Shown: in pieces, positions 1-8,081 of the stretch | Position numbering within the stretch: the stretch's first letter is position 1 | How the letters are laid out: every line of letters begins with the position of its first letter | Origin: Zygophlyctis sp. KS116 | Lineage: Eukaryota > Fungi > Chytridiomycota | Reading direction: 5' to 3' | Assembly (NCBI GenBank): GCA_054661495.1 | Contig: BAAFSQ010000229.1 | Location: 1-15,891 of the forward strand | Length of the DNA stretch: 15,891 nucleotides | Program-made: the position numbers and the translations under genes | The notes under the pieces: model-generated | The model's database searches: none | Told to the model about the DNA's origin: nothing | The model's input: only the letters and a program-made list of their open reading frames with translations

Positions 1-51
1 TGTAATATTGTTTAAGAACCAGAAAGAAATACGTGATACTAATTTAGCCAT
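1..51 (-). CDS. Possible 5' start of a gene running off the left edge (MAKLVS...)
   Basis: ATG at 51..49, preceded by GGCGCGATA. The frame stays open to position 1. A donor-like GTATTT begins at 32 and is followed by AT-rich intron-like sequence. Too short to identify. Confidence 0.3.
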   Translation of the reverse strand, partial: MAKLVSRISFWFLNNIT

Positions 52-140
52 TATCGCGCCTTAAAGTTGTTTTTTTTAACCAGAAAGAAATACGTGATAC
101 TAATTTAGCCATTATCGCGCCTTAAAGTTGTTTTTTTTTT
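17..140. repeat. 61-bp tandem duplication, 2 copies
   Basis: 17..77 and 78..138 are identical (AACCAGAAAGAAATACGTGATACTAATTTAGCCATTATCGCGCCTTAAAGTTG + T-run). The T-run is 8 nt in copy 1 and 10 nt in copy 2. Confidence 0.97.
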
Positions 141-217: not shown

Positions 218-1655
218 TTAACCGTGCAATGCATACAAATCATTCCAAATATCATGCATCATCTGGCCAACACTTTTATAATGAGGAGATAATTCTCCAA
301 CATCTCTTTCCGCAAGTTCAGGTTTTAGACAAAACGGATGGGTCGGAGCTTCCCATTCCCTAACATTTAGTTATTACTGATTCTTACCATTCTAAAGGTT
401 TAAAAGTCCGATCAATTGCAAAATGTGTTAAATTGTAAGTTTGACTCCTTCCAATTTCCGTATGCTTATTCATTTCAAGCCCTCCATTTAACCATAATGG
501 TTCCCAATTTTCATCTACATGAAATAATCCACCACAAACTGAATCTGTTGTATTTGGATTAAGATATCCAACTGCACCTCCAGCACCAGGACCCCAACTA
601 TAAGAAACTTTAAGCGCTTCACTTGACATCCAGTAGGATTCCTTATCTCCATATATATCTTTGTACATGATTGTTTTTATAGGATCCATATTAAGAAGAG
701 ATGCAAGTAATAGTACAAACATACCTCCCATTTTCTTATCCATGACTATAACACCTGATTCTTCTTCATGCAATGATATATCACGCCAAATTCTACTATT
801 CTTTGCAGAATGCGATGGAAAAGGAACCAATGATTTGAAAAAATCCAATGTAGGTTTACTTGAAGACCTTATTGTCCTGTCTCTGAAATATAATGTCCCT
901 GTTTTTACATATGACTTAAATTTAAACATATTTTCTGGATTTTGAAAAAATAAAACATCTGCATCTATAAATATAAATTCTTGAAATATTGACATGAGCA
1001 TTGCAAATGGCTTTATAGCCCATCCTTGTAATGAATTTGCTTTTAAAGGAGATAATAACTTTGATGCATCAGTTAAAATAACTCCCTCTTTTTTAAGTAG
1101 TACTTGATTTTGTAAAGATAGATCATCTATTCCATTGAAAAAAACTTGAATCGGAAGAGTACAATTTAACTTTTTCAATACTCTTAGTGAATGTACTACA
1201 TATCTACTAACTTATTTTCTCAAATCTTACTTTGCATACCAATCGCCAGTCGTAATCACAATCCCCTTTCCAGAATAACTAGAGTACAAGTCCCAAACAG
1301 ATCTAAAATATATTTTGTTGAAGGGATAAAACTCTTCTTGAAATGCAATACTTTTGCGTAATAATTCATCATCATCATTACTTAATAATTGTGAAGCATT
1401 ATACAAATAATAAGCCTCCCATATATTTTTGTGAATTGCGATCCTCTTCACCAACGATGACGGATCATCATCCTTGTATTGTAAATTTAGAGATTCTTGT
1501 ACAAGATCCAATAATTTCAACCGATCCTCTGCAACCGCTTGTCCGATTGACTCGACAATTTCATTCTGTTCTGATCGAGGTCCATAGATGTAAATCAGTA
1601 TTGATATAGAAGAAATCAAGGCTAGAACAATATATCTTGTAATCGTCTTTGACAT
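218..1655 (-). CDS. GT71 (Mnn1/Mnt-type, Mannosyl_trans3) alpha-mannosyltransferase, about 460 aa
   Basis: N-terminal type II membrane anchor. Motifs GKGIVIT, GWAIKPFAML, FIDAD (DxD), TGTLYFRDR, ESGVIVMDK and YGDKESYW. Exons 1655-1231, 1203-388, 359-218. Introns 1204..1230 (27 nt; a 24-nt alternative acceptor is also in frame) and 360..387 (28 nt) join the frames. Confidence 0.88.
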
Positions 1656-1866
1656 GAACTAACCCTTCTCTACACTTTCCCATAGAATCAGCAGAGTGGC
1701 TAATTATGCGCGTTGGTATTTAGTACGGGAATCAATACTTACATGAGTCGACAGTTGCGATGCAATGGTTTTAGAGATTTACTATTCCATAATGTACTTA
1801 CTAATCTACTTTACTGATCTACTATAAACACAATGTGACCTTGGCCTTGACTCGCGCGTCGTAAAA
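1656..1866. promoter_or_regulatory. Divergent promoter region (GT71 / NDUFB8)
   Basis: 211 bp between divergent ATGs. CGCG cores at 1709..1712 and 1853..1858, and a 13-bp imperfect tandem repeat at 1798..1823. Confidence 0.55.
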
Positions 1867-2615
1867 ATGTTGAAATTCAAGAGATTTAGTTCAATTAAAC
1901 CGACGGCAGGAGATTCGACCGGTTGGTTCAAGACAAATCCTAAAGGAGACAGTGGATTAAGAGCACCTCCAGATCCCTATGAACCTGCGGCTGCTGAATT
2001 ATGGTCTGGCATAACTGGAGTCAATCCACCGCCAAGTTTAGAGGAAACTAAAAATGATTATTTACAGCATCCATTATATACTCCACCAGCAAAACCTTAT
2101 ACAGGAATAGGTCCTCTAAAGTTTCCTCTTAAATTTCCAGAATTTGATCAGAAAATATTGTCGGCTCAAGCTTCTGGACTTCCTTCTCCAGGCGCATGGA
2201 GTTATGTTCCGTTTGATGATCCAAAATCAGCTCCAATTGGAGATTATCCTGCTGTAGTGCCACAATTCACTCAATTAAAAAATCCATCAACATACTGGGA
2301 TCAACAAGGGCGTAGAAATTATGGGGATGTCTTGTATGATCATGATAACTTTACAGACTATATATCAATTGGGCCTGAAATTCATTGGAAGACTCCTTTA
2401 ATAGGGCTACTAAGAGCGTTTGGCTTAATCGGGCTTGGAAGTGGTCTGGTTGTGTTATGGAATCCAAAATCACATTTATGGTTTGCTGAAAAAGAATATC
2501 CTTATGATGGTTTACGATTAGAACTTGGAGGTGATCCAAATAATGATCAGGATAATTGGATGTCTACGGTAGTTTAGAATTCATAATAGTATAGACAGCA
2601 AGCATTGAAGAATAG
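1867..2615 (+). CDS. NDUFB8: NADH:ubiquinone oxidoreductase subunit NDUFB8 (ASHI), mitochondrial
   Basis: Motifs GDYP...YWDQQGRRNYGD, a single TM segment and KEYPYDGLRLELGG are typical of NDUFB8. The N-terminus looks like a basic presequence. The 3' end is uncertain: the unspliced stop is at 2577, while a probable 26-nt intron 2569..2594 moves the stop to 2615. Confidence 0.85.
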
Positions 2616-2651
2616 GAAAATATAGTAAAAACATTTTCTTTTTAGGTATTA

Positions 2652-3638
2652 TTAAAGTTCATCATGACCGCTTTCGGTAGTTTCCTTTGAGGATTTAGAG
2701 TCGCTTAAATGAGGACATTTCTTTAGAGCGTCTTTGTAACTTCCTGGAGTACCCTTTGCAGCATGTGGACATGCGCCTGCAATTGGACAATTCTTGAGTT
2801 TCTTTGGATCATCACGAATGTTTTGATAATAAGGACATTTTTTGGCCAAGGGACAATTTTCAGTGGTCCATTCTTCCGTGCCTTCATTCTTCTTTAGCTT
2901 CTTTAGAGTTATTCAAAATAGAAAAGATACATCAAAGTATGGACATTTTTCCATGGGACAGCCAGCAGCACTGTCCGAGGCGACAATATCTGCTGCATTC
3001 TGATCTTTAGCATGTTTATCATAGTATGGACAGCCGCCAGTCTGAAGAGGACATCCCTTTTCTCCAGCATGTTCTCCCTTGTGAGCGCCAACATATGGAC
3101 ACTTTCCATCCAAAGGACAACCAGATTTAGAATCAGCACCTGCATCAGAGCCGGCCAGATGAGGACATTTCTTTAGAGCGTCTTTGTAACTTCCTGGAGT
3201 ACCCTTTGCAGCATGTGGACATGCGCCTGCAATTGGACAATTCTTGAGTTTCTTTGGATCATCACGAATGTTTTGATAATAAGGACATTTTTTGGCCAAG
3301 GGACAATTTTCAGTGGTCCATTCTTCCGTGCCTTCATTCTTCTTTAGCTTCTTTAGAGTTATTCAAAATAGAAAAGATACATCAAAGTATGGACATTTTT
3401 CCATGGGACAGCCAGCAGCACTGTCCGAGGCGACAATATCTGCTGCATTCTGATCTTTAGCATGTTTATCATAGTATGGACAGCCGCCAGTCTGAAGAGG
3501 ACATCCCTTTTCTCCAGCATGTTCTCCCTTGTGAGCGCCTACATAAGGACACTTTCCATCCAAAGGACAACCAGATTTTTCATTTGTATTTGTAGCATAC
3601 AAGACGGTAATGAATAGCAATAAAAGTAGGATTTTCAT
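2652..3638 (-). CDS. Secretory/ER-lumenal Cys-Pro repeat protein with C-terminal HDEL, 308 aa, function unknown
   Basis: ATG at 3638 gives the signal peptide MKILLLLLFITVLYA. Exons 3638-3381, 3350-2931, 2900-2652. Two identical 30-nt phase-0 introns (3351..3380 and 2901..2930; GTATCT...CTAAAG) each contain an in-frame TGA. The protein ends ...ESGHDEL-stop and contains 22 CP dipeptides. Confidence 0.88.
2709..3578. repeat. Intragenic direct repeat: 2 x 420 bp with a 450-bp period
   Basis: 2709..3128 and 3159..3578 are identical except at 3090/3540 and 3096/3546, both synonymous. A unique 30-bp in-frame linker lies at 3129..3158. Confidence 0.97.
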
Positions 3639-4022
3639 CTTTCGCGTTGGTGAGCTAGCCCTAAACTGAAGATTCGACATTCCTTTTAAGCAAATAGAAT
3701 CCAACTTCAAGGCAATCCATTAACGCTAAAATCAAAGAAATATGGACAAGATAATTGCTATTAAAATTACTAAAATCATAAATTTTATTATATACTTTTA
3801 AAGTAAACTGTTTCTTCCCGAGATTGGATAAATCCATCTCTCAGAAAAGATTCTTTATCTATCATGCATCCGTTTATTTTTGACAAGATTGTCAAGAACA
3901 AATTTAAAACATGAATTTAAAATTTTTAAAAAATTTCAAGACTGCAGTAGGACTAGTTGCAGGTCTGACCAACGCCAACCGACGCCGATGACGTTGCATT
4001 GTTTGCGCATTGTTTGAAATAT
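3639..4022. promoter_or_regulatory. Divergent promoter region (CP-repeat gene / calaxin)
   Basis: Longest intergenic region in the window. It contains TTTCGCG at 3640..3646, the palindrome TTGACAA-GA-TTGTCAA at 3880..3895 and two copies of GCATTGTTTG just before the calaxin ATG. Confidence 0.5.
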
Positions 4023-4731
4023 ATGACCGCCAGACTTCCAATAGAAGAATTACTGAAAATTACGAATTGTAATAATGATGATTTAAACCATTAGTCAATC
4101 GTCAAGAAATTGATTATTTATCAAGAGCATTTTCGGACTTGGCATCAAATGGTGATAAAATTGACAGATCTAGATTTAGAGATATGTTGGTAGATCAATT
4201 TGGAATCGATGATTCTTTAATCATGGACCGAGGTAAAATTATTATTTTTTATATTCTAGTTTTTAGAATTTGTGATTTGGATGGAGATAATTATATTAGT
4301 TTTGATGAATTTATGAAATGCATGTCGGTTCTACTCAGAGGTCGATATGAAGAAAAATTAAAATTCTGCTTTAGAGTTTATGATCTAAATGGCGATCGTT
4401 ATATTTCTAAAGAAGAAATGTATCAAATGTTGAAATTTTGTCTAGTTAGAGGTGCAGAAGAAGATGAAGATGGAATTAAAGACTTGGTTGATTTAGTTTT
4501 GAAGAAATTAGATGAAGATCGTGATGGTAGAGTTTCTGAATCAGATTGGGCAGGAGCAATTGCTAAAGAATCATTATTGATGGAAGCATTCGGACAATGT
4601 TTACCATATGCAAAAGTAATTTATTTAAATTTAATTTTTAGGAAATAGATGTATTCTTTAATATAGAATCAAATTCCCCTTCTCCTTCATCTAAAGTTTC
4701 CTCTACTGGAGGATTAATAAAGAGCATTTAA
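4023..4731 (+). CDS. CLXN: Calaxin (EFCAB1), NCS-like EF-hand Ca2+ sensor, about 209 aa
   Basis: The spliced protein reads MTARLPIEELLKITNFNRQEI..IDRSRFRDML..MDRVFR..YDLNGDRYISKEEM..EEDEDGIKDLVDL..LLMEAFGQCLP, which is characteristic of calaxin, with three EF-hand loops. Introns 4069..4094 (26 nt), 4233..4259 (27 nt, in frame) and 4616..4641 (26 nt). Confidence 0.88.
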
Positions 4732-4758
4732 GAGATTTCAGACTATAGATTTTTAGAA

Positions 4759-5377
4759 ATGTCCGTTCAACGGAAACCTTTAAAATCCACTGATGATACA
4801 TCGATAAACATGTAATTATTTTATTATTTATAAAAGTCCATATTCTTCTAGTTCAATGCATCAAGCAGACACTTGGAAGGCGTTAGCCACTACTATTCTT
4901 CAGAACCCATTATTTAAATTCTTTTATTTGGTTGCAGTCTTAATTTCACTATTGACTCTAATTATTTCATTCATTAACCGTTGCCCGCCCTTAATATTCT
5001 TTTTTTTGGAAGCATTAGTAAATGGACTCATGGTTATTGAAGTTGCAGCTAGATTTATTGCAAATAGAAGAAGATTTTGGGAGTCTTTTTGGAATAGAAT
5101 AGATGCCGTACTTGTAGTATTTTGCTTATTTACATTGGTACTTATTATTTTCGGACATCATCAATGTCATATTGGAGAATCAGATCCAACAAAAGAAGTT
5201 GAAATTTTGGAACAGATTATTCTAATACTGCGAAATGGAATGTCGCTATCAAGATCAGTCAGTTTAATTCAACGGTATTAAACATTTTATAATTTATAAT
5301 TTAGGAATACAATCTCTCTAAGACCAATTCAAGATGTAGATATTGATTCTGTTCCATTAACAGACTTGATTTCGTAG
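4759..5377 (+). CDS. Small 4-TM stand-alone voltage-sensor-like (Ion_trans S1-S4) protein, about 187 aa
   Basis: S2-S3 signature LEALVNGLMVIEVAARF...FWESFWNRIDAVLV and an S4-like segment LILRNGMSLSRSVSLIQR. No pore domain. Introns 4812..4836 (25 nt; a 40-nt alternative to 4851 is also in frame) and 5275..5304 (30 nt). Confidence 0.75.
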
Positions 5378-5400
5378 GAGCAGATTTAGGAGAGTAAAAA

Positions 5401-6799
5401 ATGCAAGAGTCATCAGTGCTATACTCAAATAGTGATATTATGGCTATAATTCTTTCGGGGCCGGGAGGGAAGTAAGTAATATATTGATTTTACTTGAGAG
5501 ATTGTATCCATTAACTGAAAATCTTCCAAAGGCATTACTTCCGGTGGGGAATAAGCCGATCCTTGCTTATTCTTTAGAATGGCTCGAAAAGGCTAGAATC
5601 AAGGATATCATTATTCTAACTTATCCTAAATGGAGAGAAAGGATCGCTAGTTATTTGAGCAAAGTTTATGAATTTTCTGGGGAAAACAATGTTAAAGTTT
5701 TGGATGTTCCTGATAATTGTGGATCTGCAGATGCGTTAAGATCAATCAAGGGAAAGATAAAGGTAACATAATATTATATTTATGCATAGTCTGATTTTTT
5801 GGTAATGAGTTGTGATTTGATCACGCAAGTATTACCGCATGTTATATTGGATCCTTATCGTACGCTAAATTCAACAATGACAGTCATGCTTTATGATTCT
5901 ACAAAATTTGAAGATGTTAGTGAAAAATCAGCTAATAAGGATGATGATTTTGTAGAATATATTGGAATAGATGATGCTACTTCACGTTTATTATTTTCAG
6001 CATCACAGGCAGATTTGGATGATGAATTGGATTTAAGGTTGTCATTGTTTCAGAAATTTCCAAGACTGCATTTATACTCAAAATTAAGAGACTCACATTT
6101 ATATATTTTCAAAAATTGGGTGATTGATGTTGTTGCAAAGTCAAAGAGTATAAACTCAATTAGATTAGATCTTGTACCATTACTGCTAGAATGTCAGTAT
6201 AGATCCAAGCTGGTTTGTAAAGAAGGGATTGATAAATGTAATTTTTTATTAGAATTACGAAATAGTGCTTTTGGCTCATAGTGATCCTTTTGTAGAAGCG
6301 TATGCATATTCTTCTCATGGTCAGAAAAAGGATGAGGTTGTTTGTACTGCAGTTATTTGTCGGGATTCATTATCAGTTCGATTAAATAAGAGGTTTACAT
6401 ATTCTGAAATGAATAAATATGTGATCAAAGATGCAACCTCTAGAGTAGCTACTAATGCTGATATAAGTCCAAAAACTCAGGTAGGAAAAGACTCAATGGT
6501 TGGAGATGGATCAATTATTGGAGAAAGATGTTCTGTTAAAAAGTCTGTAGTTGGTAGTCATTGTACGATTGGCCAAAATGTCAAGATTAATGGAAGTATT
6601 ATTATGGACTATGTTACTATTGAAGATGGTGTTTCATTAGTTGGTTGTATTGTATGCAACGGTGCCATTATTCAAAGCTCTGCTAATTTAAAAGATTGTG
6701 ATGTATCTTCTAAATTTGTAGTTCCAAAGGAAGGTAAGTCTAAATTAGTTTTAACTCAAAAAAGTAACTGCTAAAAACGAGTCATTTATCGAGTTTTAG
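5401..6799 (+). CDS. GCD1: Translation initiation factor eIF2B gamma subunit, about 427 aa
   Basis: NTP-transferase-like N-terminus AIILSGPGGKLYPLTENLPKALLPVGNKP, plus GSADALR, DFLVMSCDLIT, LRDSHLYIF and a C-terminal left-handed beta-helix. No W2 domain, so gamma rather than epsilon. Introns 5472..5500 (29 nt), 5763..5789 (27 nt), 6238..6265 (28 nt) and 6734..6764 (31 nt). Confidence 0.9.
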
Positions 6800-6811
6800 T
6801 TTAAGAAATCT

Positions 6812-8081
6812 TCAAATTATTTTTCCATTTTCATCAATTAGTGACACTTTTGGATCATATCCAGTTGCTAAAACTTGAGGACCACCACCAATTCTGGTAC
6901 TAATAATTTTCTTTAGAGATCCAGAGGGAGAAACCAAGATTTTTGTAGAAATATTTGCAATCATCTTTTCTAATCCATCCACAACTGATTGATAAAATTC
7001 AATCCCAGACCCAAAATATTCTTGTAAAGCAGATTCAGTAGGAGGAGGAAAAAAGTGATTTAAACACTGTAAAAACATTGCTACATTTTCTCTCGGTAAA
7101 AATATAACTGCATTTGGACCAGCATCAAACGTATAACTTGCACCTTGTCCCCCATATTGTTCTCTATGCACCTGATTATACACTGTAACAAAGGAAATAA
7201 TTGCTTTTGAAATATCATTTAGATAAAACACTGGAGGATATGTATCTAAACAAACCGAATGAAATTGATTAGAGTCTTTCATGGTCCTATAATTTTTAAT
7301 AAATTATAAATTACAATTCAGCAAAAGTCTTGTAATCCTTTTCCTTGATAGCCTTTTCCATAATTTTCATTCTTTGAGGAACCAAATTCAATCTTTGCTT
7401 AAACAATTCAGAACTTTCAACTGTTTGTTGCATTCCAAGACTAGATCCAACATCTTTTTTATCATCTGAAACTACTAAAACCAAAGCTTCCATATCTGAC
7501 CAATGTGTTTCTGGCGCAACCTGAACAGCCATTGAATCATTTCCATTTTCCAAAACCCCCATTTCCCAAGAAACAAAACCTCCAAATAGTGATCTCTAAA
7601 ATTATAAAACTAGTCTTACACAAGCACTCCCACTTCCCATTCTAGCAATCCTTGATAATTCCTGCATTCCCAAATCTAAACAGTAAAACTTTGCTAAAGC
7701 AAATGTAAGAGCAGCATAACCACTTGCAGACGATGCCAATCCAGCAGCCGTTGGAAAGTTATTCCTGGATGAAATTAATACTTTTCTAATTGAAATTTTC
7801 TCCAACTTTTCATCTTGTAATTCCATGACCAATCGTCTCTTTCTAATATTTTCCAAAACGGCCAAAACTCTTTTATTCAGATGCATCGGTTTCCCATTTA
7901 ACCAAATCTCATCCGAACCTTTGGAATTTCCAACCGTTGTAAATGACTGCAAGTCCTGTAAAGTCAAAGAAAGACTAGAATTGGTAGGCAGCATCAACGG
8001 CTCATCCCGTTTACCCCAATACTTTATAACAGCAATATTAACAGGTGCAGAGACGGTGACTTGAAAGTCTGAAATTGTCAT
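6812..8081 (-). CDS. MVD1: Diphosphomevalonate decarboxylase, about 405 aa
   Basis: Motifs [34 protein letters not shown]|RSLFGG (restored by the 24-nt intron 7596..7619), EL|TMKDSNQFH (restored by the 28-nt intron 7287..7314) and YTFDAGPNA. Confidence 0.97.

What the first reader, a model, noticed from the sequence alone, without database searches (positions are those of the whole stretch)
2652..3638. ER-retained (signal peptide + HDEL) protein made of 22 Cys-Pro motifs: candidate lumenal heme, metal or redox buffer
Seen: after removing two 30-nt introns, the three fragment ORFs form one 308-aa protein with a hydrophobic signal peptide and a terminal HDEL. All 22 cysteines are followed by Pro. 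Twenty form ten pairs [GN]-C-P-x(3-5)-C-P-[YH] (GCPLDGKCPY, GCPLQTGGCPY, GCPMEKCPY, NCPLAKKCPY and NCPIAGACPH, each twice). The other two are single KKCPH motifs. They sit in hydrophilic, Lys/Asp/His/Gly-rich linkers with no recognisable folded domain. Established: CP followed by an aromatic or hydrophobic residue is the heme regulatory motif of Hap1, ALAS, Bach1, cytochrome c heme lyase and HO-2, and HDEL is the fungal ER-retrieval signal. Those HRM proteins are not ER-lumenal and carry fewer motifs. Inference: this may be a dedicated multi-heme sponge or chaperone of the secretory pathway, a metallothionein-like ER chelator, or a non-thioredoxin thiol buffer. I do not recognise the family.
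Basis: partly seen in the sequence, partly recalled or inferred. Interest (0 to 1): 0.85.

Follow-up and report, generated by a model that had tools for sequence, protein, structure and literature searches.

The report
Chytrid ER Cys-Pro repeat protein
This real, spliced chytrid gene makes an ER-retained protein built from a cysteine-proline module for which I found no description; the same module forms the inner (lumenal) end of some fungal ZIP7 zinc transporters, so it more likely binds zinc than heme.

Summary
Two 30-nt introns are skipped in RNA contigs of close relatives, and the 308-aa model has a signal peptide, 22 Cys-Pro and HDEL. But it is two near-identical copies of one 11-Cys, 140-aa unit. 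Read depth in one DNA run suggests a collapsed array of about 4-6 units, homogenised within species. The unit defines an uncharacterised family (no Pfam, PDB, Atlas or paper match) across chytrids and Glomeromycota, mostly with signal peptide and xxEL. The Batrachochytrium orthologue is syntenic. Key new result: the same module forms the lumenal N-terminus of intron-free fungal ZIP7/Yke4 zinc transporters (Saitoella, hhalign probability 96.7%; also a metagenomic one), where other ZIP7s carry His-rich tracts. Best reading (0.45): a lumenal thiolate/His zinc buffer or hand-off partner of ZIP7. Rivals: disulfide/redox module (0.25), heme sponge (0.2). No ligand binding is shown. It is not a metallothionein, CCCH finger or PDI. 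The scan's earlier notes held no report of this family.

The parts
3381..3638 (-). exon 1: signal peptide and Cys pairs 1-3 of unit 1
3594..3638 (-). predicted signal peptide, about 15 aa (hydropathy only; SignalP not available)
   Evidence: hydrophobic N-terminus kept in homologues
3678..3680 (-). alternative in-frame upstream ATG (+14 codons)
   Evidence: the gene caller used it in relative P0003
3351..3380 (-). intron 1, 30 nt, GT..AG, in-frame stops
   Evidence: skipped in RNA contig X16; an intron is inferred at the same place in L012, L014, L015
2931..3350 (-). exon 2: pairs 4-5 and single CP of unit 1, junction, pairs 1-3 of unit 2
   Evidence: query
2901..2930 (-). intron 2, identical to intron 1
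   Evidence: skipped in RNA contig X17
2652..2900 (-). exon 3: pairs 4-5 and single CP of unit 2, tail, HDEL, stop
2655..2666 (-). HDEL ER-retrieval signal
   Evidence: sequence; xxEL/xxDL ends in 44 of 86 family hits, many of the rest being fragments
3159..3578 (-). repeat unit 1 (420 nt including intron)
2709..3128 (-). repeat unit 2 (2 synonymous differences from unit 1)
3129..3158 (-). inter-unit junction; also present in RNA contigs and in relatives at about 69% identity
   Evidence: P0001, P0002; X7, X16, X17; L012
1867..2577 (+). convergent neighbour NDUFB8 (context; same arrangement in Batrachochytrium dendrobatidis)

Best explanation
A soluble ER-lumenal protein of a chytrid, retrieved by HDEL and built of tandem copies of an 11-Cys module. 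Each element is a C-P-hydrophobic-x(2-4)-C-P-aromatic loop followed by a short helix; a few His are conserved. The module is the free-standing form of a domain that also forms the lumenal N-terminus of some fungal ZIP7/Yke4 zinc transporters, where other ZIP7s have a His-rich tract. Most likely it binds Zn2+ (or a similar thiophilic metal) through Cys pairs and His, buffers lumenal zinc, and hands it to ZIP7 or to secretory zinc proteins. Oxidation of the Cys pairs may release the metal, and more units give more capacity. Shown: gene structure, splicing in close relatives, family, conserved targeting signals, ZIP7 fusion. Inferred: ER location, fold, ligand, reduced state of the cysteines, hand-off.
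For: Fusions: Saitoella ZIP7 P0133 and metagenomic P0062 are single intron-free ORFs. The P0133 N-terminus matches the family profile at hhalign probability 96.7%, E 3e-10, including non-Cys positions. Against 500 shuffles that keep CP(Y/F/H) words, P0133 scores 47 bits (shuffle maximum 21) and P0062 58 bits (maximum 26); Glomeromycota and Coemansia ZIP7 ends also beat all shuffles, some narrowly. The whole Saitoella ZIP7 finds this gene as its best hit in the genome. CP-bearing ZIP7s fall in two separate supported clades, and the sister pair of the P0062 clade has His-rich ends instead. ZIP7 has a His-rich lumenal domain thought to hold zinc (PMC7949119); Yke4 is the ER zinc transporter of yeast (PMC7711662). 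Cys columns are 93-100% conserved and one His 98%. Weak CCCH-finger resemblance in 10-11 of 85 units, best E 0.001.
Against: The ER is oxidising; a review states that free thiols are not available there for high-affinity zinc buffering (PMC7949119). A fusion shows a link to ZIP7, not the ligand. Only two ZIP7s carry a large module; most carry 0-2 CP, and both long-module rows sit on long branches. The motifs also fit the heme regulatory motif. No ZIP7 was found in this incomplete assembly. The model has mean pLDDT 63 and gave no ligand geometry.
Confidence: 0.45

Rival explanations
1. The Cys pairs are disulfide-bonded. The module is a disulfide-stapled mini-domain or a thiol-disulfide buffer, with the odd eleventh Cys as the reactive thiol. 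On ZIP7 it would be a redox gate, not a metal site.
For: Lumenal location; odd Cys number per unit (11); review statement on ER thiols; the LIV-1 CPALLY motif before TM1 is thought to form disulfides (PMC9861476), and fungal ZIP7s have a CP-Y-I/V-x-x-L motif in a similar place. From my own knowledge, not verified here: the DnaJ-type Cys-rich domain of ERdj3 is oxidised in the ER.
Against: No CxxC and no thioredoxin fold. Conserved His beside the pairs and interchange with His-rich tracts fit metal binding better. Repeated expansion of unit number suggests a capacity function.
Confidence: 0.25
2. A multi-heme sponge or chaperone of the secretory pathway: each Cys-Pro-aromatic motif ligates ferric heme, with conserved His as trans ligand.
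For: Second Cys is followed by Pro and Y/H/F/W in most pairs, the classic heme-regulatory-motif pattern (own knowledge; Cys-Pro plus His coordination in mouse HRI, PMC12303383). Weak ALAS-presequence hits in 9 of 85 units, best E 0.02.
Against: The only credible fusion partner found is a zinc transporter; none is a heme protein, though the searches were limited by length. Pro after the second Cys of pair 3 is kept in only 66% of units while the Cys is 100%. Tightly paired Cys 4-6 residues apart are unlike the isolated motifs of Hap1, ALAS or Bach1 (own knowledge).
Confidence: 0.2
3. Another ligand or role: Cu or Fe binding, or a protein-interaction module.
For: Some ZIP7-related transporters move iron (Drosophila ZIP13, abstract of PMC5797780); thiolate arrays bind Cu(I) well (own knowledge).
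Against: No specific evidence; the fusion partners are of the zinc-transporting ZIP7/Yke4 group.
Confidence: 0.1

Closest known systems
Lumenal N-terminal domain of ZIP7/Yke4 (SLC39A7) ER zinc transporters
   Same: Homologous Cys-Pro module on Saitoella and other fungal ZIP7s; same compartment; sits where the His-rich tract lies in other ZIP7s
   Different: This protein is soluble, has no transmembrane domain or HEXPHE motif, ends in HDEL and is a tandem array. Animal ZIP7 hits have no such module, and I found no paper describing it
Heme regulatory motif proteins (ALAS1, Hap1, Bach1, HO-2, HRI, cytochrome c heme lyase)
   Same: Cys-Pro followed by an aromatic or hydrophobic residue in hydrophilic surroundings
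   Different: Motifs are paired at fixed 4-6 spacing, lumenal, and make up the whole protein; only sub-threshold Pfam similarity
Metallothioneins
   Same: Cys-repeat protein with no enzyme domain; possible metal-thiolate buffer
   Different: 7% Cys, rich in Tyr, signal peptide and HDEL, predicted helices, 140-aa unit
CCCH (C3H1/Nab2-type) zinc fingers
   Same: C-x5-C loop with an aromatic two residues after the second Cys
   Different: Lacks the full C-x7/8-C-x5-C-x3-H pattern; lumenal, not nuclear or cytosolic
Calreticulin and ERp44 (ER-lumenal zinc binders with retrieval signals)
   Same: Soluble, retrieved ER residents that bind zinc (PMC7949119)
   Different: No sequence or fold similarity found

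Membership tests
Heme-regulatory-motif heme binders | Cys-Pro followed by hydrophobic/aromatic residue | tested here: met
   22 of 22 Cys; family statistics
Heme-regulatory-motif heme binders | Cys-dependent heme binding (thiolate Soret band) | not testable with these tools
   needs hemin titration
Heme-regulatory-motif heme binders | Homology to a known HRM protein | tested here: inconclusive
   ALAS presequence best E 0.021, below cut-off; no PDB match
Metallothionein | Small, 20-30% Cys, nearly no aromatic residues, no signal peptide | tested here: not met
   308 aa or more, 7% Cys, 15 Tyr, signal peptide; no metallothionein model among the Pfam hits listed
Metallothionein | Metal-thiolate clusters | not testable with these tools
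   needs ICP-MS and spectroscopy
CCCH zinc finger | C-x7/8-C-x5-C-x3-H spacing; Pfam model over cut-off | tested here: not met
   Cys gaps are 5,15,6,23,4,19,5,15,5,17; exon 3 scores 15.8 bits against cut-off 25; family best E 0.001
PDI/thioredoxin oxidoreductases | CxxC in a thioredoxin fold | tested here: not met
   no CxxC; no strands in the model; no such Pfam hit listed
ZIP7/Yke4 transporters | Eight-helix ZIP domain with HEXPHE | tested here: not met
   absent from this gene
ZIP7/Yke4 transporters | Homology to the lumenal N-terminal segment of fungal members | tested here: met
LIV-1 CPALLY motif | C-x26-CPALLYQ-x5-C | tested here: not met
   last CP has its previous Cys 17 residues away and no Cys after it (consensus from PMC9861476)
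Soluble ER residents | Signal peptide plus C-terminal H/K/RDEL-type signal, conserved | tested here: met
   most named full-length chytrid and Glomeromycota homologues; hydropathy only
Soluble ER residents | Observed ER localisation | not testable with these tools
   needs tagging or fractionation

The most novel reading that the evidence does not exclude
Early-diverging fungi have a dedicated, expandable, Cys-thiolate metal store inside the oxidising ER lumen, free as an HDEL protein or fused to ZIP7, that couples lumenal redox state (or heme) to zinc release. This would contradict the view that lumenal zinc buffering cannot use thiols.
Probability: 0.35. Interest if true: 0.85.

Novelty: new variant of a known kind. 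Interest (0 to 1): 0.66.

Why it matters
What buffers zinc in the ER lumen, and what the lumenal arm of ZIP7 does, are open questions, and thiols are assumed to be unavailable there. This family gives a small soluble protein, and a natural fusion in a culturable yeast-like fungus (Saitoella), on which zinc, heme and disulfide readings can be told apart in a few experiments. It also defines an unnamed domain present in Batrachochytrium, Synchytrium and mycorrhizal fungi, and shows a coding array with introns kept nearly identical within species.

Tried and rejected
Annotation artefact from joining three ORFs: rejected, introns are skipped in RNA contigs. Duplication as an assembly artefact: rejected, the junction is in DNA and RNA runs and in relatives; the assembly more likely under-counts units. 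Known family: no Pfam model over cut-off, no PDB sequence match, no fold match in PDB or Atlas (the model is only pLDDT 63, so this does not show a new fold), no usable Atlas feature hit. Similarity from shared Cys-Pro composition alone: rejected by shuffles. First AlphaFold run on 12 sequences was unusable. Region search with the P0062 module found only itself and missed known relatives, so it is insensitive. Metagenome locus scans gave 0 and 1 loci. Free gene next to a ZIP7 gene: not seen in Batrachochytrium, Powellomyces or Quaeritorhiza. USE1-like loci of this genome hold no such pairs. Paper searches found no description. As the operators asked, the spliced model was searched exon by exon by reference; the joined protein was built only inside local scripts for counting and was sent to no search or folding tool.

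Full report
Observation. The gene lies on the minus strand with exons 3638-3381, 3350-2931 and 2900-2652 and two identical 30-nt GT..AG introns that contain in-frame stops. The spliced model is 308 aa, with a hydrophobic N-terminus, 22 Cys all followed by Pro, and HDEL. Metatranscriptome contigs of about 97-98% identical relatives from two studies skip exactly these 30 nt, at 3351 and at 2901. A gene built the same way, with an intron inferred at the same place, is in three related loci. An in-frame ATG 14 codons upstream leaves the start open.

The repeat. The 22 motifs are two copies of an 11-Cys unit: period 450 nt, two synonymous differences, intron included. The junction between units is real: it is in RNA and DNA contigs and in relatives (P0001, P0002, L012). 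In L012 the two units differ at 1 of 156 compared bases, while its unit is 69% identical to the window's. With a junction of the same length and similar sequence, this points to an old array kept uniform within each species. In DNA run X3 the flanks are unbroken contigs identical to the window at depth 54 and 86, the repeat is at 370-437 and the junction at 266. These ratios (4-8 and 3-5) suggest about 4-6 units in that population. This rests on one run and contig depth is a rough measure, but the contigs of relatives also end inside the gene.

The family. Exon 2 finds 24 relatives in the word-indexed search and 62 in the full HMMER search. Named members come from many chytrid genera (Chytriomyces, Zopfochytrium, Geranomyces, Powellomyces, Nowakowskiella, Batrachochytrium, Synchytrium, Clydaea, Quaeritorhiza and others) and from Glomeromycota. 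Most are single units of 170-225 aa with 11 Cys; some have three or four diverged units (33-44 Cys); Glomeromycota members lack pairs 1-2. Signal peptide and xxEL end are the rule. The gene is single in this assembly. The Batrachochytrium gene faces NDUFB8 as here, so it is the syntenic orthologue and the host is a chytrid, probably near Rhizophydiales (inference). No Pfam model passes its cut-off, and PDB, Atlas and paper searches are blank. In 85 aligned units the Cys columns are 93-100% conserved, one His 98% and one Asp 93%; the first Cys of a pair is followed by Pro and an aliphatic residue, the second by Pro and an aromatic, except that pair 3 keeps Pro in only 66%. AlphaFold2 (mean pLDDT 63, pTM 0.40) shows a loop plus short helix per pair and no strands.

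The ZIP7 link. One hit, P0062, is a single 485-aa ORF with signal peptide, ten CP motifs and a ZIP7-type transporter domain. Among the 120 best ZIP7 relatives listed, Saitoella complicata P0133 has nine CP motifs in its lumenal end, again as one intron-free ORF. It aligns to pairs 3-5 and the single motif with hhalign probability 96.7%, E 3e-10, including the residues between the pairs. It scores 47 bits against a maximum of 21 in 500 shuffles that keep the CP words, and it picks out this gene in the window's genome. Glomeromycota ZIP7s keep one or two motifs and Coemansia ones five or six; animal ones have His-rich ends and no such module. In a tree of the transporter domains, CP-bearing proteins fall in two supported clades, and the sister pair of the P0062 clade has His-rich ends (the two key rows are long branches, and 29 rows were chosen by hand). 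So the module and a His-rich tract occupy the same slot. ZIP7 releases ER zinc and its His-rich lumenal domain is thought to hold zinc (PMC7949119); yeast Yke4 is a two-way ER zinc transporter (PMC7711662).

Mechanism. The best reading is a retrieved lumenal zinc buffer or hand-off protein that uses paired Cys and His, possibly releasing metal on oxidation (0.45). Shown are gene, family, targeting signals and fusion; ligand, redox state and hand-off are inferred. The main objection is that the ER is oxidising, so a disulfide-bonded or redox module is the first rival (0.25). The heme sponge (0.2) rests on the motif pattern and weak ALAS-presequence hits; no heme-protein fusion turned up, though searches were limited by length. 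No ZIP7 was found in this fragmented assembly.

Membership and novelty. It fails the defining tests for metallothionein, CCCH finger, PDI, CPALLY and ZIP7 proper, and meets the sequence tests for a soluble ER resident and for the heme regulatory motif. It may work like a metallothionein or like the ZIP7 lumenal arm without being either. I rate it a new variant of a known kind (Cys-rich metal buffer, ER zinc handling) carried by a domain for which I found no description. Interest 0.66; 0.85 if a thiolate metal store in the ER lumen is confirmed (probability 0.35).

Noticed in passing
window 17-138: Exact 61-nt tandem duplication at the contig start; may be an assembly end artefact.
   Followed up: no
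window 384-8081; L012, L014, L015, L024: Gene order (mevalonate diphosphate decarboxylase, eIF2B-type, ion-transport, EF-hand, this gene, NDUFB8) is kept in metagenomic relatives; the convergent NDUFB8 neighbour is shared with Batrachochytrium, which suggests a chytrid near Rhizophydiales.
   Followed up: partly
G000 whole assembly: Three ZIP loci found but no ZIP7/Yke4 type; the assembly is fragmented, so absence is not shown.
   Followed up: partly
P0051, P0057, P0064, P0078: A second, more distant Cys-Pro repeat type in amoebozoans (Planoprotostelium, Vermistella) and unplaced samples; some lack a signal peptide and none has xxEL. It beats shuffles against the family profile; P0051 units are 95-97% identical.
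   Followed up: partly
P0185, P0189, P0192, P0193, P0158: Coemansia-type ZIP7s have 280-420-residue lumenal ends with 12-18 Cys, single CP motifs and a CCC/CGCGC patch.
   Followed up: partly
P0033 (Kappamyces): Gene model joins what looks like a SUMO/NEDD8-protease domain to the Cys-Pro protein; probably two merged genes (my reading, untested).
   Followed up: no
L021 and L022 (G000 C543, C336): Two USE1-like SNARE loci with the same C-terminal part and different upstream parts.
   Followed up: no
window 3159-3410 in run X3: The array differs from the window at 4 sites (3 in the intron) in the contig laid there, while about 2.2 kb of flank is identical; a further unit variant has 8 differences. 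Fits fast turnover of the array.
   Followed up: partly
window 4139-5281 (+): EF-hand ORF followed by an ion-transport ORF upstream of the gene; may be one spliced channel gene or two genes.
   Followed up: no
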